Positions 6,852 through 40,776 of a stretch of DNA of 64,000 nucleotides are shown piece after piece. The notes beneath the pieces are model-generated. The model was not told the origin of the DNA and made no database searches. It saw only the letters and a list, made by a program, of their open reading frames with translations. The number at the start of each line of letters is the position of its first letter. Position 1 is the first letter of the stretch. The translations under genes and the position numbers were made by a program. Origin of the DNA: Selaginella moellendorffii (taxonomy: Eukaryota > Plantae > Lycopodiophyta); NCBI RefSeq assembly GCF_000143415.4, contig NW_003314304.1:1478841-1542840 (forward strand), written 5' to 3'.

Positions 6852-7036
6852 ATGTTGAGGTGTTCCTAAAGTTCCTCAAGGTTAATCCTTTGTGAAACTA
6901 CCATATCCGGAATCAATAGTTTGTCAAAAATATGACATTGAAGATGAAAGGACGCTTACAAACGCTAGAAGAAAGTCCTGCAAAAGAATCAAGCTCTTGC
7001 AAGATCTCGCAAATCACAAGTAAATATAAAAGGTGG

Positions 7037-7109
7037 TTCCGTTGCCGGGAATTGAACCCGGGTCTCTCGGGTGAGAGCCGAGTATCCTGACCGACTAGAC
7101 TACAACGGA
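7037..7109 (-). tRNA. tRNA-Glu(CTC)
   Basis: TCCGTTGTAGTCTAGTCGGTCAGGATACTCGGCTCTCACCCGAGAGACCCGGGTTCAATTCCCGGCAACGGAA folds as a cloverleaf with CTC anticodon; TTTT follows. Confidence 0.96.
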
Positions 7110-11067: not shown

Positions 11068-12306
11068 TTAGCGCCAGTGCTCTTGCATCTTGACGTCGTC
11101 TTGCTTCATCATCCTGCCGTAGTCTTCGTGGTTGTACTCGCAGTTACCGCGGCCTCCAAAGGACGTGTCCAGCTTCTCCATGTCAAACACGTCCTCGAGC
11201 AGCTTGACGCTGTCGGGATCCTTGCTGTAGACGAACTTGACTTTCTTGTAAGTCTTGGGATCCAAGAATGGCTTGACTAGCTGCAACGCAAAGCAACAGC
11301 CACGAGTTATTGACCATGCAAGCGGAAAAGAAGAAGGGAACTCGAAACTTACAGCCCAGAATGCCTCGAAGATCCGGGGGGGATTGTAAAGAATCGCCAC
11401 GCCCAGCCTCTCGGGATAGTGGTTCTGCAAAACATTAGCGGTCTCGCGAGCGGCACTGAGGGGAACGGAGTTAGAGACGCTCCAACCGTGGAAGTCAATG
11501 AGCCACACCATTTGTTCCTGGTCGGGTGGCAAGTTCAGAACAGCATTCTCCAGACAGTACACCAGCTGCCGTATCTGACCATTTTGATCCTTGGTGTTCT
11601 GTGCCATCGAGAGAAAAGCCAAAAACAAGGTGAGGAGAAAAGCTGCCAGATCTTAACTCTCGACCAACAGAAAGAAGTAAAGGAGTACCTGTCTCGCAGG
11701 CCGCATTATAAGAATCGCTCTCCCGTAGTTGTCCACGAAATTGGCTCTATACACCTTGCCTGTCTCGGATTCAATGGCTATGTCCTCCTGGAAAACGAAA
11801 ATTCATCGATCAACATCAGCAACGAGGACAGAGAGAAAAGAAAGAAAAAGAAAACCAACAAGCAGAAGAAAAGCTTGCCATGGATTTAAGATCTCACCCA
11901 GCGGATGCTTTCTGGCTTGAAAGTCGCCCTCCACTTTAAAGAATCTTTAAGCATTTTCTCGGCCTTCTTTAGATTCCAGTTCCGGGCTCGCAGGTAGCGC
12001 TTGAGGCACGCGTCGGTGCAGTAGCGCTGCGATTTGTCGGTGAGAGAACCCAGCGCCGACCGCAGGCTATCCACCTGGAAGAAGGAGACGGTGATCGGAA
12101 GTAGAGAGGCTATGGAATCACTTCCGCAAGCTAGAGCTAGAGTAAGAGATAGAGATTATTACCTTTGCTTGCTCTTCCTCCGGAGAGGCTGGGTCGTCGC
12201 CCTTGCTCCGATTCCTCCAGATTGACGAGCGAGGCGATGGATGCTGCGGCGGCTGCTCCGATCCCTCGCGATCCGGCTCTCCATTCCTCTTTTTCTTGCT
12301 CGCCAT
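11068..12306 (-). CDS. SEC14/CRAL-TRIO lipid-binding protein, about 5 exons
   Basis: CTDACLKRYLRARNWN (CRAL-TRIO N); LVYCLENA, WLIDFHGW, LQNHYPERLG, VKPFLDPKT. Confidence 0.9.
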
Positions 12307-12403
12307 CGCTGTGGAGTAAAACCCTAGCGCCAAGAACAGGAAGCTTGGATCTGTGCGTGGTGAGTGCTGGCTATACCCTTGCTTGACTTCAGCAGGTCTA
12401 CAA

Positions 12404-12429
12404 CACGTGGCACGTATCTTCCACGTGGC
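12404..12429. promoter_or_regulatory. G-box/ABRE cluster in a ~200 bp divergent promoter
   Basis: CACGTGGC at 12404 and 12422, CACGTA between them. Confidence 0.5.
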
Positions 12430-12509
12430 GCGTTTCCATTCGCCGAAAGTGGAAGAGCCCTAATTTTTTGAATTTTATTTGCTCTAGGGTTCGTGACGCT
12501 TTTGGAGGA

Positions 12510-15500
12510 ATGGCTGTGCCGAGGGCGCAGCTCGAGGCGTGGCTGATCGACACGGCCAGTCCCGATGATGCATTGAGATCCTCTGCTACTGCCGCCATCG
12601 CGAGCGCCGAGGCCGTCACTGGATTTGCCGAGTGCCTTCTCGCGATTTCCGCAGGTAAAATCCCTTGCATTGTCTCAGCTCCTCTCTTTCTGAATCGCTT
12701 TCGCGCAGATCAGAATGGGACGCAGGCGATTGCCGCCGCGACGTATTTCAAGAATTTTTTGCGAGCGCATTGGGCCCAGAAGGAAAAGATCCGTGGCGCC
12801 GAGCGTAAAAATCTGAGAGAACAACTCTTGGAAGTGCTTTTGCGAGTGGATTCTATTGTTCTCAATCTATTGACAGAAGCTGTAAGTTCTTAAGTTTATC
12901 GGATCGGAGAGATGTTCTTCTGACATGGTTTTTTTTTTCCAGTTTCGAATTGTTGCTTCTCATGATTTTTCGGGCCAGGAGAAGTCATGGCAAGAGCTCG
13001 TTCCAGCGTTGCACAATGCGGTCAAGAACAGTGATCTTGTTGCTGATGTATCCACTGCTCCTCCTTACAAAACTCTGAATGCTCTTCTTGCAATTCAGGC
13101 CATCACCAAGCCATTCCAGGTGCGTATGAGAGAGGTCTCCTTTTAACGTTCTAATTGCAAAGCTATTGTTATCAGATGTGATTCGGGACTTTTGTATTGC
13201 AGTACTTTCTCGATCCTACTGTTGCGAGAGAACCTGTTCCGCCGCTTCTGGAACTCATCTCGAGGGATTTGCTTGTGCCGCTTCACGGGTTTTTCCACCA
13301 CCTTGTTGAACAGGTAAAAGTGCGCGTGCACTGAAAGTTCTTTTAACTCTTGCTCTGATATGAAGGCCTTAAAGTCAAAAGAGAAAGGATTTGCGCCACA
13401 TGACAACGTCTTGCTTGTGATTGCAAAGACTTTTCATCTCGCTGTAAGATCGCTCTCTCTCCAAGTTTTTCCATGTGTATCTTTGCTTTACAGATAGGAT
13501 CCCATATGCCAGCAAGTGTACTTTCCTGCCTCAAAATTTGGATCGGAGATGTTCTCGCGCTGCTGGACATTGTCAATGTCGATCAAACCATGGACCTTTC
13601 GGAACAATCTTCTAGACTGAAGGTTTGGAAGCGTTGCTTACAGATATGCTGTACACTGGTTGCACGACATCGAAAACACACCGAACAGTATGTTGACAGT
13701 TTCTTTCGCTATTCTGAGGAACTGATTGGATGCCCGACTCAGATTCTTATCAGCCATTTCCGCTGCATCGCTAAAGATTGTAAGCAGCCACACAACAGGA
13801 AAGGTATTTGTATGCGCATTCGAAGACAATAGTAAACAAGTGTCTCATACAGGATATTCATGTTGCGCAAGAGCGGATTATATCCTTGGCGTTTGATTTG
13901 CTGGCGAACATCCTAGAAACTGGGCCTGTAGGCTTTTCTGCTCTCGCATTTTGTAGCTTGACTCGCAAATGGTTTGTCAGGGATGGCGACTTTTGTCCCC
14001 ACAATTTTCTTCTCTGTTGGAGAAATCTATAGTTTCGGCTCTGGTGCTGAGACAAAAGGTACAATGCAAGTTGATCTGTCTCACCGTTTACTTTAAAAAT
14101 TTCTGTAGGACGTTGCTGATTGGAACGATGATGAAGATGAATACTTGCGGAAAAATCTCCCCTCTGACCTGGTAAAACTTCTCAGCTGTCAATTTTCATA
14201 CCGTAACTTGTGATATTTAGGACGAGTCGTGTGGTTGGAGGGACGATTTACTGACACCAAGGAGGAGTGCTTTGAATCTTCTTGGGGTTATTGCCACGTC
14301 AAAGGCAGGTATTCTTGCGGGACCTGTGGATTTTTGACATATGCCTGTGAAAGAAGCAGGGACCTGCTGGTGCTGGGAAGACACCAAACAAACGCAAGAA
14401 AGGGAAAAACAAGGATGGGACAGCAGGAGAATTACTAGTCATGCCATATCTGTCTCGATATCCTCTACCAACTGACGGCACGTGTTTTGAATCAACTGTA
14501 AGGTAGTACGCGCTACGTCCTAAAGGAGGTTGTAAACTGTGACTATCACTGTTTTGCAGCTACTTCGGAGTTTTGCTCGCATATGGCGCCCTTCAGCAGG
14601 TATGACTTTCTTATCTCTTACTCTCAGATTGTCTTAGTCTGTCCTATCGTTTGGCAGTTTTTTAAGTCGCAGTCGGCCGAGTATCTGAAAATGATACTCC
14701 TTTCAAGAGTTTTTCCTATATATTCTTTGACGCCTCCGTCACCTTTCCTGCTAGCAAATGCGAACTGGCTACTTGGGGAATTGGCAACTTGCTTGCCTGA
14801 GGTTTGAGCAACTCAAGGCGTTGACTAAGCTCTTCTGTGTTTCATTAGGATCTGAAGCAGCCAGTGTTTGACTCCCTGATATCCGCGATGCTGGCTGAGA
14901 ATGTTGGAGGTGTGTCCTGGAGACCTGTACGTGCGTCTGCTGCTGCTGCTCTCGCAGCTCTTCTTGAGGTCTTTTACGAAAAAATTCGTGATCGTCAATT
15001 TAACAAGGAAAAAAAAATTCTCAGGAGGATTACAAGCCAGTGAAATGGTTTCCGTTGCTGCAAGCGATCGTTTCTTCTGTCAAATCTGGTGCCGATGATG
15101 CCAGGCATGCGCTACAGCTACTGACGACTACTGTTGAGACTGGAGAAGAGGATGCTGCTGTACATGTGCCGTACCTTGTTGTGTCGATCAAAGACGAACT
15201 TCTGAGGCATCTCCCTGCTCCTCCTGACTTACAGGTTAGCCTCATTGCTTTTAATGTCTCTTATGCTTCCACTTGTGGTGTAGGTAGTGGAGCTTGGCTT
15301 CTCTTCAATGGCTGCATTAGCGCATTGTTGGGACTCTGCAGAACCAGGTGTCAGTAAGAAAGATGAGGAGCCTATAAAGAACTGGAGAGAAGGCTGCATA
15401 ACGTTAAGAAATACATTTGCGCAGCTTTTGCAACGTGCGTGGATCTGTTCGCCCGAGGTATACTTGGTCGTGGGATGTTATAGTTCTTACGTTTAAAAGT

Positions 15501-25198: not shown

Positions 25199-28109
25199 TC
25201 ATTGAGGGAGCTTGCCGTGGAGGTATTGAAGCAACGCTTTTGTTCCGCGCTCGAGGATGCCTCGCCGAATGCTGCAGGGAATCCAAGATCACTAAAAAGC
25301 CTCTGTATCGCGAGAGCTACCTTCTCAATGGATTCCCGTCCACTTTAAGCTTGCGTAATGTGGGTTCCAGATATCCCTGATGACCCGGACAATGAGAAGC
25401 AAAGAAAAAGAGAACTTTGCGGGAAAAGCATACCAGTTGAGGAGGAAGAGTAGACAGGTTGTTGTCCGTCAAGTCCAGTTCTTCGAGCGTACTCATCTCA
25501 CCGAATTCCTGCATCAAGCAATAGCACGCAAAACATAAAAGAACTTAAGAGACTTGCCTGAGGTAGCACGCTAATATTGTTCTGGCTCAAGTCCAAAATT
25601 CGTAAGCTAGACATCCGGGGCAAATCCCAAGGGATGGCTGCCATTTGAGTTCTCCTGTGCAGACGCCAAAGTTAGTTTTAGAGAGAGTCTAAAAGCATGT
25701 ATACGTTTACTCACATCAGTCGCAGTTCTTGGAGGCCAGTCATTAGAGACAAGCACGGAGGTGGTAGAAGCTGTGCAACCACGCCACTTAAATCCAGGAG
25801 TTGTAGATTGGACACGGCCGAGAATGCACCTGGTGGAAGCTAAACACACGCAGGTTAATACAGAAAGTTGGAGCTTGTTTGAAAACCCCGTACCGCAACT
25901 ATAGGATTTCGAGCAAGATTTAGATGCTTGAGGTTTGGTAGAGAGGCGAAAACGCTTCCTGGCCACTCTTGGATCTTATTGTCTGCAAGAATGAGAGCCT
26001 GTGACGCGATAACTTGGTGAGACAAGAAACTGCTTTCTCGAAATGCTGATTACCTCCATCGAAGTGCACATCGACATTTCTGGCGGCAGCTCTTGGATGC
26101 AGTTCTTAGCAAGATCAAGTTGGACAAGGTCGCATGACTCCCACACTGCAGGAGGAACATGGTCCAAATTTTTGTCGGAAAGAGACAAGGCCTGAAATAA
26201 AGTTCAGTCTGTTGTCTTTGAAAGTATTAATTGGAAAGAGTTTGGTACCACACTTTTGAAGAAACTGCCACTCGTGCTGCTTGGACAACCTGCTCCTGGA
26301 TGTTCATGCCAAATATATTGCCTGACGAGGCAGCTTCTGGTTTTGATTCTGCAAATCAGAAGCTGGAGTTGAAAAGTCTTGTTCCAGCCTCATAAATTAC
26401 CATCTTCAGCTGTGGAACGATCACGCAAGTACTTAAGTAGAGCAGGAGTACTTCCAGTAACCAAGGAACTGCACTCATTAAAAAGAAAGTGCAATCAGTA
26501 CTTTGGCATAGGTCAAAGATCTTACGTTCTTAACGTTCGCAAGGGATTTCCTGTAAGCACAAGCTTTCTCAACGATCCCATGAAGCCTGTAGGAACCGAA
26601 GTGTCAAAAACGCAATCAGGAACTTCAGCTTTTACTAACCGAGCTCAGGAGGCAATCCGCTTAGATTGTTGTTAGAAAGGTCGAGCACAGAAAGCCGCAT
26701 GGAACAAGCAGAAACTGGGAACTCAGAGAGCTGAGAGACAATGTTTAGTGGAAACATCACACAAGGAGCCACACAAGGACTGGAAACATCACCTGATTAC
26801 CATGCAGATCAAATGTGAGCAATGACTGGAGGTTCCCAATCTCGTTTGGAAGAGAAGAAAGCAAGTTATCTCTGAACAACAATAAAATGTATATATACTT
26901 TTTAGACACATGTAAAGAAAGGTACATACCCAAAATACGCCTCCACCAGCATACTGCAATTTACCAAAGAAGATGGTATCGACTTGATCTCTATGCGGAA
27001 TTTTGTCAGTAAGCTAATCACATTTGAAAATAGAGCACATACTATTCTGATGTAAGTCGAGACGTAGAAGTCGAGTGAGATTACCAATTTCTTCTGGTAG
27101 CTCAGTTATAGCATTCTTTCCTGCAGTTTAATTCCACTAGAAATAAGATGATGCCGAAACGGGCGGAAGAATGTACCTGCATTAAGCTCAGTCAGATTAC
27201 CGAGCGAGTGGAACAAGCTTGAAGGAAAACCGGTGATTTTGTTTCCCTACAAGCAAGTCACAAAAGTGGGATCACCGGATTCAACGAGAAAGTAGAAAAG
27301 TAAGAAAGAATCACTTTTACCTCGATACTGAGGCTAATCAGTCGAGAACAGGAAGCCAGTTGATCTGGCAGAAATGTGAGGCCATTGTTGGACAACTGGA
27401 AACAAACACTCGCGCTAGAAAAAAGCACAAATTTTTCACATCTTCACCTTTAGCTCTGCAAGATCAACACACAGTCCAATCGTGGAAGCAAGCTCCTTAA
27501 TTTGGTTGTTGGACGCGAGAAACCTGCCAAAAAACAAATAAAATAAGGACCCACACGATTCGTGTCGATCGTGTTCGTATTTCTGTAGCTTACTTCACGA
27601 GAGATGCTAGATTTCCAATCTCCACCGGAAGTTCCAAAATCGCATTGTGAGAAACATCGAGCGTCTTCAATGAAGTCAGCCTGAGAAGAAAGAATCAGCA
27701 GACGAGAAAAGTCAAGCCACTAAAACTCTTACATGCCAATGCTTTCAGGAAGAGATTCCAGTTCATTGTAGCTGATGTTGAGGACCACGACAGAGACGAG
27801 ATTCCCGAGCTCCTGGGAAAGAAGCTTGATCTTGTTGTGAGCAAGAACAAGCCTGTGAAGATCTACAAGCTTGAGAAGACAAACCAGCAAAACGGTTTAT
27901 AAAAAGTCCAATGCGAAACCATACCTCCCACCACTTTTCATCCTGCCCAACACACTCCAGGAGCTTGTAGACTTGCGGAGGCACTTCCCTGGAATCACCC
28001 ACATTACCAGTTAGTGTCGCAAGTAAAGGATTGAATGCGCGTACCTCAGATTCCTGTTGGAGAGGTCGAGAGAACCGGATGCTCGAGCCATCTTGAGAAG
28101 GCGTTCCAT
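25199..28109 (-). CDS. Intracellular LRR protein (LRRC40/PIRL-like), many short exons
   Basis: [21 protein letters not shown] start; LxxLDLxxNxL repeats; GNPLR...GTKALLQYL caps. Confidence 0.85.
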
Positions 28110-28216
28110 TCTCTCCTCACCTCTCTACCTAGGGCTCACACTCAATTTCTTCTTCTTGGCTGTTCCAAGCACTTCCCATCCAGTTTATAAGACATGGATG
28201 GGTACAGGCTGTTTGG

Positions 28217-29950
28217 TTACTTGTTTTCTTCAAAATCCAACCAGTCCAAGTTGGCGATTTGCTTCGTCTCCACATCCCGTGCTTGTTTCAGCGTCTCTTC
28301 GTATGAGCCGGTCTTGGACCTCCGGACATCGTCTAAAAATTTCGATTTGTCCCTCCTCCAGTCTTTGAAAGCGTCGTCAGCTTCTGTGAACACTTTCTGG
28401 AACAAGCGAGAGGAAGAATGAAGAGAGCAATAACGAGAAATGAAACATCTTACCTCCTTGTCTGCGATAATCGATCCCTTCTCGCGCTCCAAGAGTGAAG
28501 TGCTGATCAGAAGTTGTTTGAGAATATCGAACAAAAAAAGGAAAGAAAATCACACCTTAAGATGACTTTGTCCGGAACTCGAGGTCTCAGTACTACTGCC
28601 TTGATGCGATCCCCTTCCGCAAAAATGTCGGCCACGCGAGCAATTCTTCGATGGGATATGTTCGATATATGGAGCAATGCGCTGAAAGAAAAAAAAAAAA
28701 AGACGATTCAAGCCGGTTCGATACATAGACAAACTACCTTAAATCTGTTTCATCAATGCTGACAACAACTCCATAAGCTTCAACCTTCTTGACAACACCT
28801 TCAACTAGTGAGTCCGGGGGTGCAAGCTGTTGTACCTGAAAAAATAGCAGAACAGTACCCATTAAGTGGACTCTATTCAGAGAAACTGAAGATACCCACC
28901 CATGCTGCGCGTTCGTTCACAAGTATTCTCGCTTTTGCTTCCTCTACCTCAATAATCATCACAAGCAAAGTTCTTCCCACCTATACGCAACAGAAAGCAC
29001 TTCAGTTTCTTACGTGAAGTGAAACTGTATCCAGCTTACATAGTCTTTCAGCTGTGTGATATCCCGAGGCGAGTTCTGGATCATATCTTTTGGAAGGAAA
29101 GCTGTCAACCCCTGCAATAGTTTGGTCGGCCACCAAAATCGGGTAAATGCTCCAAACGAAGTACCTCAATCCGACAGATCAGCCCACCGAGATTGTACGA
29201 TTCAATCCGGACTTCTATACTTTCTTCAGCGCTGTGAATCTGACTAAAAGAAAGCAGGAAATGAAATTCCACCATGATCAAAATATGAACTGCTAGAATA
29301 AAGAGAAGAATACTCACATCTCTCACTCGTTGCCAAGCGATCGGTCGAGAAAAGTTCCGCATAGATAGCAAAGCTGTGCCGCTCAAAGTCTTCCCGATTA
29401 TCAAAAGCTGCACAATCGTCCCAGGCTCCACCATGAGATCGCCACCAGCGGAAGCATCCAATGCCTCGTCATCTTTCACGAGACAAGCCCGACCACTTGT
29501 TGGTGGAACAAATCTCTCCGAATAACCATCAGAATTATCGTCGTCAATCCTCCACATTCGATCTTCCAGCTTGAACCTCTCGAAAGGAACAAGATCCCGC
29601 GCAAACATCATTCCCAGCGATTGAGCTCCTATGTCCACTTCCAATTTGCTGCTGTTCCCGGACACTACCATCCCCACAACAACATCCCCGAGCTTTGGCT
29701 CGTAGTAATCCACCGAAATATCCTCCACAGGAGCTGGAATCGGCGCCTTCTCCTCGAAATCTTCCTTCTCCTCGCCAGCGCTGCTGTTCTTGCCTACTGG
29801 AGGAACCGGTACCTTAATCTCTGCTCGAATCGGCTTCTGTGGACTCGGAATCGATCTGACACTGCTTTCACCCTGCATTGCCCGGGCGCTCATCCTAGAA
29901 CTCCTTGCCGGCGCGCAAAACCCTGGGCGCCATAGCGCTTGCTTCTCCAT
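28217..29950 (-). CDS. PDE338: Plastid S1-domain RNA-binding protein (PDE338/RLSB-like)
   Basis: Transit-like N-terminus; DYYEPKLGDVVVGMVVSGN S1 domain; further S1 repeats; IANLDWLDF C-terminus. Confidence 0.78.
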
Positions 29951-30042
29951 CGCTTCCAAAAACCCTAGGGAAAGAGGAGGGAGAATCTTTTATTTATTTG
30001 TTTAAAACTCACAAGAATCAAGGAAGAGTCTTGTTGGACGAA

Positions 30043-31768
30043 TCATCCAGCCAAGTTTAAAGTGAACGATACATATGGATGAGCTTCCACTTCTCCTCCC
30101 ACGATTCCAGCCACGCCACCACCATCTTCGTCAGATTTCCAAAAGCCACTGCGCGATCAAACACGCTCGAATGTCACAAACCAAGAAAAAAATCCATTTT
30201 TTTCTTTACCTGTTGGGAGCATTACACAGTCCTTCGAGCATTGATCGGACTTTCTTCTCGTTTCTCTGGCTAGGAGCCATCACTGCGGCCTGTGAATCGA
30301 GAAAAAATGGTTTTTTGTATAGACAAATCTTTGGTGGTATGGATGGATCTTACCAGGAACTTTGGAGGAAGGCCGTATCTCAAAATACTCTCGGCAAAGA
30401 TCCGGATGGCACATATGTGCATCCACGCACTGAAAACCTGCGACGAGGGATGAAAATTGTTTTTCAGATCACGAAAGATAAAAAGAGAAAATGATCACAC
30501 ACCTCTCCGTAACTAGCACAGCACCACTGTTGGAGGGAGCTTCGTAGGCTGTCGAGTTCGCGGCTCAGCTTATCTTGTTCTTGCCTTCTTTGTTGTTGTC
30601 CCTCTGGATCAAACTCGATATCTCTAACCTGATAGAATCTAAAGGCCGTCAGTGAAGAAGAAATGGACTTTTTACCTGGAAGCCTCTCTCTCGTGCAGCT
30701 GATTTGAAGTTGTCTGCTACCTTGCGAAAGAGGATCACGGTGTACAGAGCATACTCGTTGTCCTCGTGTAGCTTCGCAGATGATCGAGGAACCTGAAACG
30801 TTTTGATCAAAATCTTGCGGTTAGAGCGCGCTGTCTTACCACAAAGTCAGTGAGACTTTCGTAGCTCTTTAGCCATTCGTTTTGCGAAAACTTTGAGACT
30901 ACCACCACTAAAGTCACCAGGTGCTCCGTGCTGATAACGTCGGACGGCTTCACCAGGTTGGAGATGTCACGCGCGGCCATGCTACAAAGAACCAAAAACT
31001 CAGTTTTTCCAGCACGAATGACCGCGACAGACCTTCCAGTTTGCCTGCGATTGATAGCACTGAGTTGTGTTTTCACATTCGTGTACTCTGCTACTCTAAT
31101 CTGCAAGAAAATTCACAACACCAACTTGAGCAAATCACACACAAAAAAAAACTCACTTTTAAGTCGTCTTCGTGCTTGGAAACGTTGTCTTGGATCATAT
31201 CGGCAGTCTCTCTGAGAGGATTCATGAGTGGATACTTCGCCTCGTCCCACGTAAATCTGTCAGTAGTCACGACAAACGCTTTAGAATTCCGAGCACTAGG
31301 ATGAGAAAGAAGAAAAACAAATCGTTCTCTCTACTTGGTAATGTAAGTGTCAACTGGTACCCCATCGACTGTAAGAGCGCTCGCTTCCACTCCAGCGTGA
31401 TGATCCAAATCCTCGATCTGGCGACGAATCTTGTGTGTCACTCCCTCCACCACGCCATTGATCTACATTTTTTTTTCCCAGTAGCCCTTGAGAATGAATC
31501 CATCGAAATAATTGAGCTATGAGTACCTTGACAAGATCATCGCTGAGAACCATGAGCGCATCGAGCGTCCCGATCCGCAATTCAGGGATATTGAACTGCG
31601 ACGAATGGGAGTGAGGAAGAAGGAAGAAGAGATTTGGGGAAATACCTTGTAAGTCGGTGTGTCGAAGGCGACTCTGGAGATCCCTTGCTGCAATGCGGCC
31701 CATGTCGCAGCTGCCGATTCGAGCACCGGGAGCGAGACGAGGCAGTAGCGCGTCACGGCCAATGCCAT
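30043..31768 (-). CDS. VHA-C: V-type H+-ATPase subunit C
   Basis: [62 protein letters not shown]. Confidence 0.93.
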
Positions 31769-31826
31769 CGAGCGATCGATGCCGCGCGAGAGCGAAGAGG
31801 GAGAACAGAGATCCCAAAAACTTTAG

Positions 31827-31842
31827 AACCCTAATTAGGGTT
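31827..31842. promoter_or_regulatory. Palindromic double telo-box in a bidirectional promoter
   Basis: AACCCTAATTAGGGTT perfect 16-bp palindrome between divergent ATGs. Confidence 0.6.
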
Positions 31843-31862
31843 TTGTGGCTTGTGTGCGTCTG

Positions 31863-34410
31863 ATGCGTTGCGTTGATGCGATGTCGGCCGTGTCGGCCAT
31901 GGCGATGGATCATCGTGTGATCGCTCCAGCCCCTGGATCCCCAGCATTTCAATGCAAGCTGCGAAAATCTCCATCTCCATCGCCAGCGCCATGGAAATGC
32001 AGGGTTTTGGCTTCCTCCTCGAGCGAGCGCCAGTTTCTTCAGAGAAAGCGGCCGATCTACGTCCCTAGCAGGATCGATGATCCCAGCTACGTCCGGATCT
32101 TCGACACGACGCTCAGGGACGGCGAGCAATCCCCCGGCGCGACGCTGACGAGCAAGGAGAAGCTCGACATTGCGCGGCAGCTTGCCAAGCTGGGCGTGGA
32201 CATCATCGAGGCGGGATTCCCAATCGCGTCGCCCGACGATCTCCTGGCGGTCAAGGGGATCGCGCTCGACGTTGGCAACAGGGTGGACGATGACGGGTAT
32301 GTTCCAGTGATTTGTGGGCTCTCTCGATGCAACAAGGCGGACATAGCTGCCGCCTGGGAGGCTGTGAGCCATGCTCTCCGGCCTCGAATCCACACCTTCA
32401 TCGCGACTAGCGAGATCCACATGAAGCACAAGCTTCGCAAATCACCGGACGAGGTCGTCCAAATCGCCACTGACATGGTTGGATACGCCAAGAGCCTTGG
32501 CTGCCAGGACATCGAGTTTAGTCCCGAGGATGCTGGAAGGTATGCATGGAGATTTTTTTTCCTTGCTTGTTCTTGATCTTCTGACACGAAAAAACAAATT
32601 TTGTTTGTTTTTCTAGGTCCGATCCCGAGTTTTTGTATAGAATTCTCGCGGAAGTTATCAAGGCTGGAGCCACCACTCTCAACATTCCGGATACTGTTGG
32701 CTACACGCTACCTTCGGAGTTTGGAAGGTTGATAGCAATGATCAAGGAAAACACGCCGGGAAGCCAGAATGTTGTCATTTCTACCCACTGTCAAAACGAT
32801 CTTGGACTCGCGACTGCCAACACTCTTGCTGTAAGTGTTCCTCATAAGAAGAAACTTTTCTTGCTTTCGTAGTTTTTTGTTTCTCGCAGCTTGAGATTCT
32901 CGGGTCTGATCTTTCGAGCAGGGTGCTTATGCAGGTGCCAGGCAATTGGAAGTAACAATCAACGGTATTGGAGAGAGAGCAGGCAACGCGTCGCTTGAAG
33001 AGGTTTGCCATCTTAAAGTCTGCCTGGGTTTACCCGTTACTCATTACTTCGTCGTAGGTAGTCATGGCTATTAGATGCCGCGGAGACGAGCAGCTCAATG
33101 GTCTCCACACGGGCATCAAACCCAAGCATATTGCTGTCACAAGTCGCATGGTGAGTTTTACTTCAGTTTCTTCTGTAACGTGGCTTTCTCTCTGGTTGCG
33201 CGTTTCAGGTGTCTGACTATACAGGAATGACCGTTCAACCTCACAAGGCCATTGTTGGGGCCAACGCATTTGCTCACGAAAGCGGAATCCACCAGGTTAA
33301 ATCTACATACTGTAATGGAAGAGGTCTCACGTAATTGTCTCTTGGCAGGATGGGATGCTAAAGTTTAAAGGAACTTATGAGATCATGTGTCCGGAAGACA
33401 TTGGACTTGTTCGTGCTGATGAAGCCGGTATCGTCCTTGGAAAGCACAGGTAACAGCTATGGTTTTTGCTGCTTGTTTGTCCTGACGGCGAGCTTTTTAT
33501 CTTTAGTGGTCGGCATGCGTTAAAAACTCGGTTGTCCCAGGTATGACTGCCCGTTTTAGCATCAGTTGCCATAGTCTAATTCTACGAGCTGATAGCTGGG
33601 ATACGAGCTAGAATCCAAGAAGCTGGATGACGTTTTTAAACGTTTCAAGGCTGTGGCAGACAAAAAGAAGGTAATGTTGTACTTTGCGATGTTTTCCGGC
33701 TTCTAAGTGCTGTGCTGTGCTTTTAGTCCTTATCGGATGTTGACCTGGAAGCTTTGTTATCGGACGAAGTTTTTCAACCAGAAGTTGTGTGGGCTCTTTT
33801 GGACCTCCAGGTTTGCTGCTTTTGCTGTTGCTTCGGCTCACTGTTTGAATACCTTTCTTGAAACAACAGGTCGTGTGTGGAACCCTGGGATTATCAACAG
33901 CGACCGTGAAGTTATCTGGTCCAGATAACATTCAACGTGTTGGTACGTCCATTGGAACGGGGCCTGTGGATGCAGCATACAAGGCAGTTGATTCAATCGT
34001 TCAGGTAATCAAATTTCCTTGAGGAAACTTTTGCATTGCACTGAACAATCTTACAGATTCCAGTAACTCTTTTGGAGTATTCCATGAACGCTGTTACTGA
34101 AGGAATCGATGCAATCGCCAACACAAGAGTCGTGATACGTGCCGAGAACTCGACTCCAGTAACGCACGCCCAAAGCACAGAGCCTGTTCAGAGGTCTTTC
34201 AGGTGAGAATCCATGAAGTTGCTACATCTTCATTCTTACGATTCAACCTTCTGCCTGCTCAGTGGATCCGGTGCATCCGAAGACGTGACAGTCTCAAGCG
34301 TCCGAGCTTACGTGAGTGCTCTTAACAAAGTGATTGGATTTTCCAAAGCAGTCCCTAGTTCCGAGTCGTCGGTTTCAGCTACTCAGGCTACCACAGTTGC
34401 GACAAAGTAG
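31863..34410 (+). CDS. IPMS: 2-isopropylmalate synthase, plastid, with C-terminal regulatory domain
   Basis: [71 protein letters not shown]; start could be 31881. Confidence 0.95.
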
Positions 34411-34470
34411 AGATAACTTATCCCAACGGTAGCTGTACAGTTTTGCAAGATTTAATCCAGGGATATAGCT

Positions 34471-35874
34471 ATGGAGCTAGCGTCTGGCTATGTCGCCTTG
34501 AGCAGGAGTGCCGGGTTTGTCACTAGCAGCAGCTCTTGCCACTTTCCGGCACTGGTCAGCAGCAGCTTCTCGGGGATTTTCAGCCACAGCTCCAGCTCGA
34601 GTAGCGTTCGCTGTAGGAGGAATGTGGTGGAAATTCTAGAGCAGAGGGGACTTGTCGAGTCGATTGCTGGCGAGAGCTTGAAGAAGGCATGCGACGAGAA
34701 ACCCATCAAGGTGTACTGCGGCTTCGACCCCACAGCGGAGAGCTTGCACCTGGGAAACTTGCTGGGAATTGTGGTACTCGAGTGGTTCCAGCGGTGTGGT
34801 CACGAGACCGTGGCTCTTTTAGGTGGTGCGACTGGAAGAATAGGCGACCCATCGGGAAAGAGTGCTGAGAGACCTGTCATGGATGAAGCTACGATCGAGA
34901 AGAACACGCAGGGAATCCAAGCTCTTCTCACGGAGATCTTGCAGCAAAAGGCTGTTGTGCTCAACAATTACGACTGGTGGAAGGAGTTTAGCTTGCTCGA
35001 GTTCTTGCGGGATGTTGGAAAGTTTGCTCGGGTTGGAACGATGGTTGCAAAGGAGAGTGTGAAGAGAAGGCTGGCCTTGGAAGAAGGTATCAGCTTCACG
35101 GAGTTTACGTATCAGCTACTGCAAGGCTACGACTTCGTTCATCTCTACAAAAGCAATGGCGTTTCGGTCCAGATCGGTGGCAGCGATCAGTGGGGGAATA
35201 TAACTGCTGGAATCGACTTGGTACGCAAGCTCTTGCAACGAGACGATGCCTACGGCCTCACTTTTCCACTTCTCGTCAAGAGCGATGGAACCAAGTTCGG
35301 AAAATCGGAAGGTGGCGCGGTGTGGCTCTCGTCGAAGTTCCTGTCGCCGTATCACTTCTACCAGCACCTCTTTGCGACACCCGACTCGGACGTGATCAAG
35401 ATGCTGAGAATGCTCACGTTTGTGGAGCTGGAGGAGATCGAGGCGCTGGAGAAATCCATGTCCGAGCCGGGGTACGTCGCCAACACTGCTCAGAGAAGGC
35501 TGGCGGAAGAAGTGACGAGGTTCGTGCATGGAGAAGATGGCTTGGAGGAGGCTCTGAAAGTCACACAGGCACTGGCTCCTGGAAGCACCACGACGCTGGA
35601 CTGGACAGCGATCGAGGCCATCTCCAAAGACGTACCGTCGTGCACGCTCGACTCGTCCATCGTCGTCGGCCCCGTGGTGGATCTGTGCGTCAGCTGCGGC
35701 CTCGCTCCGAGCAAAGCTGTTGCTCGTCGCCTCATCAAACAAGGTGGCATCTACATGAACAACGCGAAGGTGGACGACGAGAGATTGCTCGTGGCGGAGT
35801 CGGATATCATCGATGGCAAGATGCTGCTACTTTCGGCAGGAAAGAAGAACAAGATGGTCGTCCGGATTGGTTAA
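34471..35874 (+). CDS. Tyrosyl-tRNA synthetase, organellar (bacterial-type), single exon
   Basis: YCGFDPTAESLHLGN, IGDPSG, YQLLQGYDF, QIGGSDQWGNI, KFGKS, S4-like C-terminus; Ser-rich transit peptide. Confidence 0.96.
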   Translation: MELASGYVALSRSAGFVTSSSSCHFPALVSSSFSGIFSHSSSSSSVRCRRNVVEILEQRGLVESIAGESLKKACDEKPIKVYCGFDPTAESLHLGNLLGIVVLEWFQRCGHETVALLGGATGRIGDPSGKSAERPVMDEATIEKNTQGIQALLTEILQQKAVVLNNYDWWKEFSLLEFLRDVGKFARVGTMVAKESVKRRLALEEGISFTEFTYQLLQGYDFVHLYKSNGVSVQIGGSDQWGNITAGIDLVRKLLQRDDAYGLTFPLLVKSDGTKFGKSEGGAVWLSSKFLSPYHFYQHLFATPDSDVIKMLRMLTFVELEEIEALEKSMSEPGYVANTAQRRLAEEVTRFVHGEDGLEEALKVTQALAPGSTTTLDWTAIEAISKDVPSCTLDSSIVVGPVVDLCVSCGLAPSKAVARRLIKQGGIYMNNAKVDDERLLVAESDIIDGKMLLLSAGKKNKMVVRIG

Positions 35875-35884
35875 GATCCTCGCG

Positions 35885-36365
35885 AAGTCAGTCACAAGAA
35901 CGAGATGGTTGTCTAGATTTTTCAAGCTCCTCGTAGTCGGCGGTCGTCTCGATCGGTTAAGTTCTTCGTGAGGCCAGTCACGGGAGAGCGAGCTTGTCGA
36001 GTCGATGGTCGTCCAAGTTTCTCGCTAAGGTCAGTACTTTGAGATGGTTGTCTAAGCTCCCCGCTCGCGTAATCGGCCACAGGGAAAGGACGGACTAAGA
36101 ACAAGATGGTGGTTAAGTTCTTTGCGAAGCCAGTCACGGGAGAGCGAGTTTCTGAGGATCCAGTGCAAGTGTTTGCGCAAGTTTCTCTCATAGTCGGTAC
36201 TTTGAGATGGTTGACTAGATTTTTCATCTGGGAAAGGAAGTACGAAGAACAAGATGATCGTCTCGATCGGTTAAGTTCAGTCACGGGAGAGCGATCCCGT
36301 CAGGATTCGGTTACAGGAAAAGCAAGTTTTTGCGCAAGTTTTCTCTCAAAGTCAGTACTTCGGTG
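35885..36365. repeat. Degenerate ~150 bp tandem repeats
   Basis: GGTTAAGTTC...CAGTCACGGGAGAGCGA near 35955, 36112 and 36269; GTACTTTGAGATGGTTG at two sites. Confidence 0.7.
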
Positions 36366-37116
36366 AACAGGAAACGAGGAGATTGTCCGTTCAGTCTCGA
36401 GAAGATGGTCGTTAAGTAATCATCAGGGAGGAGGAAAGTTACAAACAAGCGAACAACACGGCATCGGTTAAGCTACTCGCAAAGTCAGTCTGGATCTGGA
36501 TCGCGAGAGAAGCGACACGGACTGTGGATCAGTTAAGTTATCCTCGCAGCGAAGTCATCAAGAAGAGGAAGACAAGGAGGAAGAGCCAAGAACAGAGGGA
36601 AAGCAAAAACAATGCCGTGAAACTTCCACAGGTGCTAGGCCTGGATTGGGCGCTGCGTCTCGGCCACATGGTTGGCTGCCTGTCCGGAGCAAACGAGCGA
36701 GCACTACATGTGTGCCTGTGGCTGTGGTCAGAGCGCCAAGCTTATTCAGCGGAGCAAACAAAACAGCACAAGCACGCTCGCTGCTTCCTTCGTCTCCTCT
36801 CCATTTAAGTAAGCTTTTCTTTCTTCTCCACTTCGCATTCTTTTCTAGTTTCTCTAAGTGCTCGCCTTTCCAGGGGCTCGATCGAGAATGCCAAGCGTAA
36901 GGAGATCTACTACTACCACCTCGCTCTCGCACTCTCGCTCGCACAGAGTTCGTTGCTTCTGTTCGAATTTTTTCCGTTTGGAAAAATCCCAGCCGGGTGA
37001 AGTGCACCGACGAGAAAGTGCTCGCCATCGCCCAGATTTGAGCGTACGTAAAACCATCATCAACGCGGTTAAGATCGCGACTAAGACCTACAACCACGAG
37101 CGAGGAGCACACTTAC

Positions 37117-37385
37117 ATCTCCAAAAAGTAAGCTTTTAATCTTTGTTTCACGCTAGACGAGCTCCTGGCTATGGAGGATGAGAGAGAGATCTCCAAAAAG
37201 AAAGCTTTTGTTTCGATGATTCCCTCTAAACGAGCTTTTGGCTATGGAGGATGGCTTTTAGCAACAGAGAGATCTCCAAAAAGAAAGCTTTGTTTCGATG
37301 ATTCCCTCTGAACGAGCTTTTGGCTATGCAGAGATCTCCAAAGCTTTGCTTGGAGCTCTTGGCTATGGAGGATGGCTATGGAGAT
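37117..37385. repeat. ~75-80 bp tandem repeat downstream of EIN3
   Basis: AGATCTCCAAAAAGAAAGCTT(T)TGTTTCGATGATTCCCTCT(A/G)AACGAGCTTTTGGCTATG twice plus partial copies. Confidence 0.85.
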
Positions 37386-37537: not shown

Positions 37538-40063
37538 TCAAGCTCCGAAGTACCAGATCGGCTCGTCCGTGATGATCTCGTGCGAAGCTCCCCGGCACAG
37601 CATTCTCGAGTTGTCCATGGCCAGATTCAAGCTCGCCGCTGGGACGTAGGCCTGCACGGCGTTGTGAAGCACCAGATTCTCTCCCAGTACGTGATGATGG
37701 TGGTGGTGGTGCGATGGCGGTGGAGGAGGAGGAGGAGCCTCGAATTGTGGCTGCTGCTGCTGGTAGTGCTGGCGATTGTGCTGCTGCTGCTGCTGCTGTT
37801 GATGGTGCTGTTGATGGTGATGGTGCTGGTGATGATTCGCAACTCCGCTAAACAACTTGTGATCCATCCGATGCTCGTGATGATGATGCTGCTGCTGCTG
37901 CAGACCGCGTCCCGGATCCAAAACCGTCACTCTACTGTGACTGTTGCTCGCGGCGGCGGCGGCGTTGTTACTGCCAAGAGCAAATCCCAGGCCGCTAAAA
38001 CCATGATCCATGCCGCTGCCACCGCCACCATCGCCAAAGTGATGATCGCCGAGCTTGTGGTCGATGGCTTCCACCAGCTGCTGGAGCTGGAGCCCCGCGG
38101 TGCTGCCACCGTAAATCCCCAGTAGCAGCTCGTGAAGTGGCTGGCTGCTATTGCTGGCGGTGGTGGCTGTGCCAGTGGTGGTGATGGTGGTGGCGGGGGT
38201 GGTGGTGCCATTGCTGGACGCAAGCAGTGCTGCTTGGGCCTGTGGAGGATGCGAGAGATCCTCGGCTGACAGGATCGCGGATTGAAACAAGCCGGCTTTG
38301 TTGTCTTGCTGCTGCCCCGCGATTAAGGCGCTTGTCGTCGCCGCCGACGCCGCCGCCACCGAGGCTGGCGCTTGACTGCCAAAGCCATGGATGTGATTCT
38401 GGTGCTGACTCCCATTCCCGGCGTGGATCACACTGACACACTTCGCTTCCGGCCTGTGCGGGCAGCTGCTCTGGTGGATGTTCCTCAAGCTCCTGTCCCC
38501 AAACGCGAACTTGAGGTCGTGATGGCGGCAGTCCTCGTACTGGCAAAGGAACGCTCGGTTCACGTTGTCTCCTCCCAGATTACTGCTCAGACTCCCTACC
38601 AGCCTCGGGATCCTCCGCTTGTTCCAGCTCTCGTCCTGCTGATGATCCACCACCATGTGATTGTGATGCTGCTGCTGCGACATGATCTTACTCTCCTGCT
38701 GCTGCTGGTGAAGAACAACGTCCGCAAGCTCCCCATTCACCACACTCACGTTGGCCGTGGTGGCAGTGGCAGCACCGGATCCCCCACGACCACCACTCGA
38801 TCCAACGAAAGCTGGCGGCCCATTGACCTCGGCTGGATCATCCTCGCACGAGACAACGTTGAGCGAGCCATCGAATCCATCCACGTCGTACTCGCTCGTA
38901 CTGCTCAGCGCCAGACCGTTGCTCCCTTCACTGTTGTTGCCGCCAGTGGCGGCCTGCTGGATCTGCGAGCCGGAGATCACCATCCCGTTGCTCATCACAA
39001 TCACCTGGCTATGGTGGTGGTGGTGGTTCTGCTGCTGCTGCTGCTGCCCGATCAAATTCCCCGAGCACTGCCTCGCCAGCGCCTCCTCCTGGTTGAGCAC
39101 CGAGATCCACGTCGCGCTCTCCTTGGCAGTCATCTTGTCTTGCAAGCACTTGGACTGCCTCACGAGCTTCCTGATCTTCCCGATATCTGGGGACATGTGT
39201 CGGATCACCGCAGTGAGAACTCCAACCTTCCACACCTTCTTGAGATCATGGGGCTTCTTATACGGCGGCGGCCCCTGCCCCTTTGGAAGCCCAAGCTCGG
39301 GCCACCACTCCTCGTCGCCGCTCGGCCACCACGGCGGCGCCACCCCTTTCTCCAGCGGGTACCTCCGCTGGGGTGGATCGCAGTGCTGCATTAGCGCCGA
39401 GAGAAGCGATCCGAGGGTGGTGTCCTGGAGCTCCTGGAGAGTGTGTGGCGTCGGGGCGGCGGCGGAGAGCTGGCCAGCGCCTCCGCCGGATCTGGAGCAG
39501 ATGCCGTGCTCCGCCTCGTACTTGGCGATGGCGGCGGGGCCGTTCCGATCGAAGCGGACCTTCTCCTTCCACCACGCGCGGATGTTGTCGCTGGCGCCGC
39601 TCACTGGCTTGCCCTTCTCGGGGATGATGCCATAGACGAATCCTTGGGCTTTGCAGACCTCCATCATCTTGAGCATGTACTTGAGGATCCCGTCCTGGGC
39701 TCGCGACATCTTCTTCCGCCGGGCTTGCTCCTGGGATTGCTTGTGCTTGGGGAGATTGCCCAGATTCTGGTGCTGCGCTGCTGGGCCGTCGTGATGCTGC
39801 TGCTGCTGCTGCCCATGGCTGCTGTGATTCGAGTGATTCGAGGAGAATGCGTTGTTGACCCTGGCCTTTTGCTTGTCCTTGATCCGCTTGAGCCGCAGCC
39901 GATCGTTCCAAATCCTCTTCTCCAGCTCGTCCACGTCCATGTCGTCGTCGCTGAAATCCTCGTGATCCTGGACGACCGCCTCGCCCAGGCCTCCATCGTT
40001 GTCTCCCACAAGATCCACGTCCAGGCCATAGCAGAGATCCGGGTCGCCGCCGTGGAGCTCCAT
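37538..40063 (-). CDS. EIN3: ETHYLENE INSENSITIVE 3-like transcription factor, intronless CDS
   Basis: [81 protein letters not shown]; poly-Q/H tracts. Confidence 0.96.
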
Positions 40064-40776
40064 CTTGCGGATCGATCGGAGTGGAAATATTTCGAGCAAG
40101 CGCTTCCGAGAGGAGGGAATATTTCGGAGCGATTACCTCCAATTCGCCATGGAAAGCCGAGGATCGAATGGGAAAAGCGAGGAAGATCACGGGATGCAGA
40201 GAGAAAGAAGGAAAAAGCTCGATTCAACGCGAGCCCCTTGTGTGATTACCTAGCTCCATCGATGCCCCGTCGACGCGCGCTGCGCTCGCCGATCGCGCCC
40301 GTGACACAGTGGCGCAGCGCCTTCAAATTCGACACATTGCCCGGGCAAGCGTCACAATCCCAATGCCGCCACCGCTGCGAGGCGCTGCCAACACGATCAA
40401 CGAGAATCGATGCCCTAGCGCATCAAGATCCCCGCTTTGCTCGGCGAGAGAGAGAGGAGCAATGGCGCAGCGCTCCTCGCCATAGCCAACTACTAGCTAA
40501 TAGCTATCCATCCAAATGCCGTACAATTCCCCCCAGGTCGGGTTTATGACATGGAAGTCCACTGGCTTTTTGACACGTGGCACAGCTACATCTGGATATA
40601 CAATCCAGCCACCGTGGACGCCCTTTTCAGCCCTTCGGGCTTACGGCCAATTTAGGTATCTGCCTCAAATTTAGCTAACCGGTTTGTTGCCAGATTTAGC
40701 AGCTCCCCGAATTTAAATCACTTTTGTCCAAGCTGCCAGTTTGTCGGAATCCAGTTTGGGTCATAAAATGGACCAC

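What the first reader, a model, noticed from the sequence alone, without database searches (positions are those of the whole stretch)
25199..35874. Operon-like five-gene block radiating from one ~100-bp bidirectional promoter
Seen, leftward: VHA-C stop (30043), 92 bp, PDE338 ATG (29950); PDE338 stop (28217), 107 bp, LRR ATG (28109). Rightward: IPMS stop (34410), 60 bp, TyrRS ATG (34471). The VHA-C and IPMS ATGs are ~95-110 bp apart around a palindromic telo-box. Under 400 bp of intergenic DNA serves five genes, too little for separate 3' UTR, promoter and 5' UTR. Known: nuclear polycistronic mRNAs are documented in green algae but are rare in land plants. Inference: polycistronic or overlapping transcription, or promoters embedded in upstream exons.
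Basis: partly seen in the sequence, partly recalled or inferred. Interest (0 to 1): 0.75.

Follow-up and report, generated by a model that had tools for sequence, protein, structure and literature searches.

The report
Five tightly packed spikemoss genes
Five ordinary housekeeping genes of the spikemoss Selaginella moellendorffii really lie only 60-107 bases apart, but the sequence points to separate, overlapping transcription units and not to an operon, and the same packing recurs elsewhere in this genome.

Summary
The geometry is confirmed to the base. On the minus strand lie V-ATPase subunit C, an S1-domain (PDE338-like) gene and an LRR gene. On the plus strand lie isopropylmalate synthase (IPMS) and an intronless organellar TyrRS. 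The stop-to-ATG gaps are 92, 107 and 60 bp. The head-to-head gap is 94 bp, around a perfect 16-nt telo-box palindrome.

A polycistronic mRNA that feeds the downstream genes is not supported:
- The VHA-C>PDE338 gap holds the only two AATAAA motifs on either strand in 11.6 kb.
- An exact telo-box follows them, starting 10 nt before the PDE338 ATG.
- All six exact telo-boxes in the window sit in promoter-like places.
- The upstream ORFs are 1.1-1.9 kb long with 21-35 AUGs and show no AUG depletion, unlike green-algal polycistrons.
- The gaps have no unusual RNA structure.

Read-through RNA cannot be excluded, least of all for IPMS>TyrRS. An intron-like element in the VHA-C>PDE338 gap is not significant (about 0.1 expected by chance).

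This scan has already noted the same architecture on other pieces of this genome.

The parts
25199..28109 (-). LRR-protein gene CDS, about 20 short exons. The N-terminus reads [21 protein letters not shown]. The internal exon model is approximate.
   Evidence: Frame reads; exon model; Pfam LRR_8/LRR_4 on single exons.
28110..28216 (-). 107-bp gap from PDE338 to LRR. On the transcribed strand it holds TATAAA 28 nt after the stop (75-80 nt before the LRR ATG), then an AAGAAGAAGAAA run and a GA-rich leader. Two out-of-frame ATGs lie at or before the TATAAA. There is no exact telo-box.
   Evidence: RNA fold z = -0.6.
28217..29950 (-). S1-domain RNA-binding protein gene (PDE338-like): 8 exons, about 437 aa, with a Ser/Pro-rich N-terminal extension.
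   Evidence: Pfam S1 model positions 5-25 and 30-63 fall on two adjacent exons; RRP4_S1 matches exon 1.
29951..30042 (-). 92-bp gap from VHA-C to PDE338. In the direction of transcription it holds: two overlapping AATAAA (29998-29989); a 19-nt pure pyrimidine tract (29985-29967); and an exact telo-box (29967-29960) starting 10 nt before the ATG. It contains no ATG. A candidate 48-nt GT..AG element (30012..29965) encloses both AATAAA motifs.
30043..31768 (-). V-ATPase subunit C gene: 11 exons, 380 aa.
   Evidence: Pfam V-ATPase_C; C-terminus matches PDB 7uw9_O and 36qu_O.
31769..31862 (.). 94-bp head-to-head gap between the VHA-C and IPMS ATGs, with the palindromic double telo-box AACCCTAATTAGGGTT (31827-31842). 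On the VHA-C side a pyrimidine-rich tract lies between the telo-box and the ATG.
   Evidence: The palindrome gives fold z = -2.5.
31863..34410 (+). 2-isopropylmalate synthase gene: 12 exons, about 624 aa from the first ATG. The ATG at 31899 has the best start context.
   Evidence: Pfam HMGL-like and LeuA_dimer.
34411..34470 (+). 60-bp gap from IPMS to TyrRS. It has no ATG, no NNTAAA-type signal and no telo-box. A weak 54-nt GT..AG candidate (34407..34460) scores at chance level.
   Evidence: fold z = +0.4.
34471..35874 (+). Organellar (bacterial-type) tyrosyl-tRNA synthetase gene: a single exon of 467 aa.
   Evidence: Pfam tRNA-synt_1b at 1e-78. Exact match to an NCBI S. moellendorffii protein; related models are named 'tyrosine--tRNA ligase, chloroplastic/mitochondrial'.
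35844..36560 (+). Degenerate tandem array (units of roughly 150 bp) that starts with the last 30 nt of the TyrRS CDS. It probably lies in the TyrRS 3' UTR.
   Evidence: RefSeq isoform X2 equals an 86- or 400-nt repeat-to-repeat deletion.

Best explanation
This is a very compact block of five separate RNA polymerase II genes whose transcription units abut or overlap.

VHA-C and IPMS share a 94-bp bidirectional telo-box promoter. Each downstream gene (PDE338-like, LRR, TyrRS) starts at its own short promoter, which lies over the 3' UTR or last exon of the gene in front. Each upstream mRNA is cleaved and polyadenylated inside or just beyond the next gene's promoter or 5' region.

Shown:
- the coordinates;
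- the two AATAAA motifs and the telo-box in the VHA-C>PDE338 gap;
- the promoter-like placement of every exact telo-box in the window;
- the long, AUG-rich upstream ORFs.

Inferred:
- the positions of transcription starts and poly(A) sites;
- the TATAAA in the PDE338>LRR gap acts as a poly(A) signal, a TATA box or both;
- the TyrRS promoter lies inside the IPMS last exon or 3' UTR.

Some read-through RNA probably arises as a by-product, most plausibly across IPMS>TyrRS, but it would not be what feeds the downstream proteins.
For: - Exact telo-box AAACCCTA occurs 6 times in the window against 1.56 expected; 0 of 100 shuffles reach 6. All six sit in promoter-like places: starting 10 nt before the PDE338 ATG; in the bidirectional gap; 13 nt before a minus-strand ATG at 12306; 77 nt before the ATG at 51586; and in both LTRs of a retroelement just before a TATATA.
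- In Arabidopsis and rice, telo-boxes are about 8-10 times denser in 5' UTRs than in 3' UTRs (PMC3022908).
- The only AATAAA motifs on either strand between 29302 and 40918 are two on the VHA-C strand, 45 and 49 nt after its stop. Selaginella uses AAUAAA as its top poly(A) signal (PMC6413133).
- The gaps before PDE338 and TyrRS hold no ATG. The two ATGs in the LRR gap lie at or before the TATAAA, so an AUG-free leader remains after it.
- The upstream ORFs are 1143, 1314 and 1875 nt long, with 21, 22 and 35 AUG triplets and observed/expected ratios of 0.9-1.2.
- The three tandem gaps fold no better than shuffles.
- Public gene models use the same TyrRS ATG.
- In Arabidopsis read-through loci, 202 of 271 second genes still had a detected transcription start site, and the second ORF of seven of eight bicistronic read-through transcripts tested was rarely translated (PMC9768141).
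Against: - There is no transcript, cap or poly(A) data for this locus.
- TyrRS has no recognisable promoter motif, and IPMS has no recognisable poly(A) signal within 490 nt of its stop.
- LRR has only a TATAAA and GA-rich sequence; one-mismatch telo-boxes are at chance level (47 found, 46.5 expected).
- The pyrimidine tract and the TAG|G of the telo-box before PDE338 also look like a splice acceptor. Four of the five long pure pyrimidine tracts on this strand in the block are intronic.
I did not check it.
Confidence: 0.62

Rival explanations
1. Arabidopsis-type read-through with intergenic splicing is a substantial product here. Pol II often fails to terminate after VHA-C, and perhaps after IPMS. 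A short intergenic intron removes the first gene's poly(A) signals and gives spliced two-gene RNAs. The downstream proteins still come mainly from their own capped mRNAs. This can coexist with the best explanation.
For: - The VHA-C>PDE338 gap holds a 48-nt GT..AG element (30012..29965) with a consensus GTGAGT donor, a 19-nt pyrimidine tract and a TAG|G acceptor.
- This element encloses both AATAAA motifs, which is the arrangement described for 158 Arabidopsis loci (PMC9768141).
- Its donor-plus-acceptor score of 8.1 lies at the 37th percentile of 38 local introns, and its length fits their 47-91 nt range.
- IPMS has no visible poly(A) signal before TyrRS.
- Earlier scan notes report such intron-bridged pairs elsewhere in this genome (unchecked leads).
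Against: - Elements this good occur at 1.17 per kb per strand in non-coding DNA of the window. That gives 0.11 expected in 92 nt, or about 0.3 over the three gaps.
- With the composition term included, 0.8 are expected per gap.
- The acceptor-like part is explained independently by a pyrimidine patch plus a reverse telo-box.
- The IPMS>TyrRS candidate (score 3.1) and the PDE338>LRR candidates (2.2 or less) are at chance level.
Confidence: 0.22
2. These are true polycistronic mRNAs. One capped RNA from the bidirectional promoter carries VHA-C, PDE338 and LRR, another carries IPMS and TyrRS, and the downstream ORFs are translated from them as in green algae.
For: - The inter-ORF distances (60-107 nt) fall within the algal range, whose medians are 40-260 nt.
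- The gaps before PDE338 and TyrRS contain no AUG.
- VHA-C and the first IPMS ATG have weak -3 contexts, while the downstream ATGs have a purine at -3 and G at +4.
Against: - Algal first ORFs are short (median 291-600 nt) and AUG-depleted (observed/expected about 0.5), which allows leaky scanning. Here they are 1143-1875 nt with 21-35 AUGs and observed/expected 0.9-1.2 (PMC7896298, PMC11892635).
- Two AATAAA motifs and a telo-box lie between VHA-C and PDE338.
- The gaps have no IRES-like structure.
- In Arabidopsis the second ORF of seven of eight bicistronic read-through transcripts tested was rarely translated, and read-through transcripts accumulate in NMD-deficient mutants.
Confidence: 0.05
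3. The tightness is an annotation artefact. One or more start or stop codons are wrong, through a missed upstream exon or a later true ATG, so the real gaps are longer.
For: - The N-termini of PDE338, IPMS and TyrRS are unconserved targeting-type extensions.
- PDE338 has further in-frame Met codons at residues 20 and 25, and IPMS has four early in-frame ATGs.
Against: - The VHA-C stop is the conserved natural C-terminus, and the protein starts directly with Pfam-matching sequence.
- The TyrRS ATG is the one used in public models, and the other haplotype's model starts 4 codons further upstream.
- The next in-frame Met of TyrRS lies after the HIGH-motif region.
- Moving to the later Met codons would widen the PDE338 gap only to about 150-165 bp.
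Confidence: 0.04

Closest known systems
Arabidopsis read-through transcript loci with intergenic splicing (Kurihara et al. 2022, PMC9768141)
   Same: - Same-strand neighbouring genes.
- A candidate short intron between the first gene's 3' region and the second gene's 5' region that would remove the first gene's poly(A) signals.
- The second genes are expected to keep their own start sites.
[quoted passage not shown]
   Different: - No RNA evidence is available here.
- The intron-like element is not statistically distinguishable from chance.
- The gaps (60-107 bp between coding sequences) are short enough that overlap is obligatory and not occasional.
Green-algal nuclear polycistronic loci (Gallaher et al. 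2021, PMC7896298; PMC11892635)
   Same: Co-oriented ORFs separated by tens to a few hundred nucleotides, with AUG-free inter-ORF gaps in two of the three pairs.
   Different: - The first ORFs are 3-6 times longer than in the algae and are not AUG-depleted.
- A canonical poly(A) signal and a promoter motif lie between the ORFs of the first pair.
- A single promoter and single poly(A) tail have not been shown.
Plant telo-box / pyrimidine-patch promoters and short bidirectional promoters (PMC3022908)
   Same: - Exact AAACCCTA within about 10-80 nt of the ATG.
- The telo-box is adjacent to a pyrimidine tract or GAA repeats.
- One palindromic copy serves two divergent genes.
   Different: In the PDE338 case the whole promoter region doubles as the 3' UTR and poly(A) region of another gene. 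No site II (TGGGCY) partner motif was looked for.
CDC26-TTM3 bicistronic transcript of land plants (as cited in PMC9768141; details from my own knowledge)
   Same: A land-plant example in which two proteins come from one nuclear mRNA.
   Different: In that case the upstream ORF is very small (own knowledge, not checked here). The upstream ORFs here are 380-624 codons.

Membership tests
Green-algal-type polycistronic mRNA | Short inter-ORF distance on one strand | tested here: met
   The gaps are 92, 107 and 60 nt. Algal medians are 40-260 nt.
Green-algal-type polycistronic mRNA | Short first ORF (median about 290-600 nt) | tested here: not met
   The first ORFs are 1143, 1314 and 1875 nt.
Green-algal-type polycistronic mRNA | AUG depletion upstream of ORF 2 (observed/expected about 0.5) | tested here: not met
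   There are 21, 22 and 35 AUG triplets, with observed/expected 1.14, 0.89 and 1.22. They were counted exon by exon.
Green-algal-type polycistronic mRNA | Weak start context on ORF 1 and stronger context on ORF 2 | tested here: inconclusive
   VHA-C has T at -3, and the first IPMS ATG has C at -3 and C at +4. PDE338, LRR and TyrRS have a purine at -3 and G at +4. No Selaginella consensus was available for scoring.
Green-algal-type polycistronic mRNA | One promoter and one poly(A) site per locus, with no signals between the ORFs | tested here: not met
   This holds for VHA-C>PDE338: two AATAAA and an exact telo-box lie in the gap. The other two pairs carry only weak signals or none.
Green-algal-type polycistronic mRNA | Full-length reads spanning both ORFs, and co-expression | not testable with these tools
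Read-through locus with intergenic splicing (Arabidopsis type) | GT..AG intron from the 3' region of gene 1 to the 5' region of gene 2 | tested here: inconclusive
   The VHA-C>PDE338 candidate is 48 nt with a donor-plus-acceptor score of 8.1, the 37th percentile of true introns, but 0.11 are expected by chance per gap. The other two gaps are at chance level.
Read-through locus with intergenic splicing (Arabidopsis type) | The intron removes the first gene's poly(A) signal or site | tested here: met
   Both AATAAA motifs (29989-29998) lie inside the candidate element 29965-30012. This is conditional on the element being a real intron.
Separate overlapping transcription units with telo-box promoters | A promoter motif close upstream of each ATG | tested here: inconclusive
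   An exact telo-box is present for VHA-C, IPMS and PDE338. LRR has only TATAAA and GA-rich sequence. TyrRS has none.
Separate overlapping transcription units with telo-box promoters | A poly(A) signal after each upstream stop | tested here: inconclusive
   VHA-C has two AATAAA motifs. PDE338 has TATAAA at +28. IPMS has none within 490 nt. Only about 8% of Selaginella poly(A) sites use AAUAAA, so absence says little.
Bidirectional promoter | Divergent genes whose starts lie within a few hundred bp and share a motif | tested here: met
   The ATGs are 94 bp apart around the palindrome AACCCTAATTAGGGTT.

The most novel reading that the evidence does not exclude
Selaginella moellendorffii may routinely co-transcribe chains of full-length housekeeping genes and still make the downstream proteins from those multi-gene RNAs. 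That would need some route other than leaky scanning, such as internal processing, re-capping or efficient re-initiation. This five-gene block, driven from a single 94-bp telo-box promoter, would be one such unit.
Probability: 0.06. Interest if true: 0.85.

Novelty: new member of a known kind. Interest (0 to 1): 0.35.

Why it matters
If the reading is right, this locus shows how far a vascular-plant nuclear genome can squeeze Pol II units. The same roughly 90 bp would serve as 3' UTR, poly(A) region, core promoter and 5' UTR. A telo-box would mark the restart point a few bases before the next ATG.

That makes the block a compact natural test case for three things: transcriptional interference; termination against read-through; and minimal plant promoters, since about 100 bp may be enough to drive a housekeeping gene.

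On its own the locus is one more instance of an architecture this scan has already seen repeatedly in this genome. Its value is mainly as a well-defined locus for a CAGE, poly(A)-seq or long-read check.

Tried and rejected
- Intron-bridged gaps: I scored all GT..AG pairs of 44-95 nt with site matrices built from 38 local introns. The IPMS>TyrRS candidate would delete the stop and join the two ORFs in frame, but it scores at chance level. PDE338>LRR has none. VHA-C>PDE338 is suggestive but not significant.
- IRES-like or other RNA structure in the gaps: z-scores are -0.6, -0.5 and +0.4. The 7-bp hairpin around the TATAAA is not exceptional.
- Non-coding RNA genes hidden in the block: no Rfam match at gathering score in 22-40 kb, and no tRNA in the block.
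- Relaxed telo-box (one mismatch) before LRR or TyrRS: 47 matches against 46.5 expected, so it is uninformative.
- A TyrRS 5' exon spliced in from upstream, suggested by the other haplotype's model starting MDIA. The three codons before our ATG already read D-I-A, and the codon before them is AGG where ATG would be needed. A single-base difference between haplotypes is therefore the simpler reading, though unverified. A donor at IPMS ATG 31881 would need a 2.6-kb intron with a poor GTCGGC donor.
- A canonical intron to explain RefSeq isoform X2 (C-terminus VVSIG): none exists. Only 86- or 400-nt repeat-to-repeat deletions without GT..AG give that peptide.
- Literature on Selaginella intergenic distances, TSS maps or Iso-Seq: nothing usable was found, and the genome paper is not held.
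- Joined spliced proteins were not built or searched. Exons were searched one by one by reference, and AUG counts were made per exon, with only the four junction bases added.
- The large protein searches were not used, because no claim here depends on them.


Full report
**Source and context**

Earlier notes of this scan place the window in Selaginella moellendorffii. The TyrRS ORF is an exact NCBI protein of that species.

**Observation**

I re-read both strands in all frames and built approximate exon models with a small splice-aware dynamic programme. I corrected three places by hand.

On the minus strand:
- V-ATPase subunit C: ATG 31768, stop 30043-30045, 11 exons, 380 aa.
- LRR gene: ATG 28109, stop 25199-25201.

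On the plus strand:
- IPMS: first in-frame ATG 31863, stop 34408-34410, 12 exons, about 624 aa.
- Organellar TyrRS: a single exon, 34471-35874, 467 aa.

Pfam confirms each identity exon by exon. The VHA-C last exon aligns to the extreme C-terminus of solved plant subunit C chains, so that stop is the natural one.

The gaps are 92, 107 and 60 bp, and the two divergent ATGs are 94 bp apart, 353 bp in all.

The outer borders of the block are ordinary. The right tail-to-tail gap is 1.66 kb, to the stop of an EIN3-like gene; the left one is about 0.7 kb, to a gene with a weak phosphatase-family match whose end I estimated from ORFs.

**What the gaps contain**

VHA-C>PDE338:
- On the transcribed strand the gap reads, in order: 30 nt, GTGAGT, an A-rich stretch with two overlapping AATAAA, a 19-nt pure pyrimidine tract, the telo-box, 9 nt, then ATG.
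- These are the only AATAAA motifs on either strand between 29302 and 40918.
- Selaginella uses AAUAAA as its leading poly(A) signal (PMC6413133).

Telo-boxes in the window:
- Exact telo-boxes are enriched: 6 against 1.56 expected, with no shuffle reaching 6.
- All six sit where a promoter should be. Two are in this block, one lies 13 nt before an ATG at 12306, one lies 77 nt before the ATG at 51586, and two are in the LTRs of a retroelement directly before a TATATA.
- In Arabidopsis and rice the motif is about 8-10 times denser in 5' UTRs than in 3' UTRs (PMC3022908).
- So VHA-C has its own 3'-end signal and PDE338 its own promoter mark, inside the same 92 bp.

PDE338>LRR:
- TATAAA lies 28 nt after the stop and 75-80 nt before the LRR ATG. 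A GAA run and a GA-rich leader follow it.
- The two ATGs of this gap lie at or before the TATAAA.
- The TATAAA could act as a poly(A) signal, a TATA box or both. This is inference.

IPMS>TyrRS:
- The gap has no recognisable signal of either kind.
- This is the pair for which overlap or read-through is hardest to avoid.

**Test of the polycistronic reading**

Green-algal polycistrons work by leaky scanning. Their first ORFs are short (medians 291-600 nt), AUG-depleted (observed/expected about 0.5) and weakly initiated (PMC7896298, PMC11892635).

Here the first ORFs are 1143, 1314 and 1875 nt. They carry 21, 22 and 35 AUG triplets, with observed/expected ratios of 1.14, 0.89 and 1.22. A scanning ribosome would not reach the second ORF.

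The gaps fold no better than shuffles, so nothing suggests an internal entry site.

In Arabidopsis, 271 read-through loci are known. The second ORF of seven of eight bicistronic transcripts tested was rarely translated, read-through transcripts accumulate in NMD-deficient mutants, and start sites were detected for 202 of the 271 second genes (PMC9768141).

**Test of intron-bridged read-through**

Earlier scan notes pointed to intron-bridged pairs elsewhere in this genome. The Arabidopsis paper describes intergenic introns that remove the first gene's poly(A) signal.

I built donor and acceptor matrices from 38 local introns (47-91 nt) and scored every GT..AG pair in and around the gaps.

- The 48-nt element 30012..29965 has a site score of 8.1, the 37th percentile of true introns, and it encloses both AATAAA motifs.
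- Elements that good occur at 1.17 per kb per strand in non-coding DNA of the window, so 0.11 are expected in a 92-nt gap.
- Its acceptor half is also just what a pyrimidine patch followed by a reverse telo-box looks like.
- Against that, four of the five long pyrimidine tracts on this strand in the block are intronic.
- I leave this element open at roughly one in four.
- The 54-nt IPMS>TyrRS candidate would fuse the two ORFs in frame, but it scores at chance level. PDE338>LRR has nothing.

**Reading**

The most likely picture is five separate genes with obligatorily overlapping transcription units. A core promoter and two UTRs cannot lie side by side in 60-107 bp. Each downstream promoter must therefore sit within the upstream gene's 3' UTR or last exon, and Pol II from the upstream gene must run through it.

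It does not match the operon picture of the title.

Read-through RNA as a by-product is likely at some level, but I expect it not to be the source of the downstream proteins.

**Limits**

- Internal exon borders of the LRR gene are approximate.
- The name PDE338 was not verified beyond 'S1-domain protein'.
- Joined spliced proteins were neither built nor searched. Exons were searched by reference, and AUGs were counted per exon with only the junction bases added.

**Relation to earlier findings of this scan**

The same architecture has been noted on several other pieces of this genome: gaps of 16-180 bp, often with a telo-box before the next ATG. Two follow-ups reached the same 'separate promoters' reading. 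One reported spliced read-through pairs, and one reported assembled RNA crossing a gene trio.

I treated these as leads. On this locus I tested the telo-box placement and the intron-bridge idea myself. I could not test the RNA continuity.

**Verdict**

The block is an extreme but recognisable case of known plant features: a bidirectional telo-box promoter, tandem genes with overlapping ends, and possible read-through. Interest is moderate to low for this single locus. The genome-wide pattern is the more interesting object, and it needs transcript data.

Noticed in passing
window 35844-36560: A degenerate tandem array (units of roughly 150 bp, 3-5 recognisable copies) begins with the last 30 nt of the TyrRS coding sequence, so the gene's 3' end has been duplicated repeatedly into its downstream flank. 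RefSeq isoform X2 (C-terminus VVSIG instead of VVRIG) corresponds to an 86- or 400-nt deletion between GGTCGTC repeats, without GT..AG ends. That could be repeat slippage, a polymorphism or a reverse-transcription artefact.
   Followed up: partly
window 34459-34470: The other haplotype's RefSeq TyrRS model is 471 aa and starts MDIA before MELASG. In this window the same codons read AGG GAT ATA GCT. A single-base difference probably creates an upstream in-frame ATG there, which would leave only 48 nt after the IPMS stop. I could not check this without that scaffold.
   Followed up: partly
window 350-357 and 5164-5171: Both LTRs of a retroelement (gag-pol ORFs at 498-4894, minus strand) carry an exact telo-box directly followed by TTATATAC. 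The element's LTR appears to use the host's telo-box promoter motif.
   Followed up: no
window 12306-12510: A second small divergent promoter. An exact telo-box at 12319 lies 13 nt before a minus-strand ATG (12306). A near-telo-box at 12485 lies 25 nt before a plus-strand ATG (12510). The ATGs are about 200 bp apart, and a CRAL/TRIO-domain ORF lies nearby at 11068-11628 (minus strand).
   Followed up: no
window 37538-40099 (minus): A single long ORF of 853 aa with a full EIN3 DNA-binding domain (Pfam 2e-125), apparently intronless, lies tail-to-tail with TyrRS.
   Followed up: no
window 37117-37328: An 82-bp tandem repeat, 2.8 copies, 82% matches, lies between the TyrRS flank and the EIN3-like gene's 3' end.
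   Followed up: no
window 28176-28201 (minus strand): A 7-bp inverted repeat (CCATCCA ... TGGATGG) encloses the TATAAA of the PDE338>LRR gap. The gap as a whole folds no better than shuffles (z = -0.6).
   Followed up: yes
window 7034-7109 (minus): A tRNA-Glu(CTC) gene, the only tRNA in the window.
   Followed up: no
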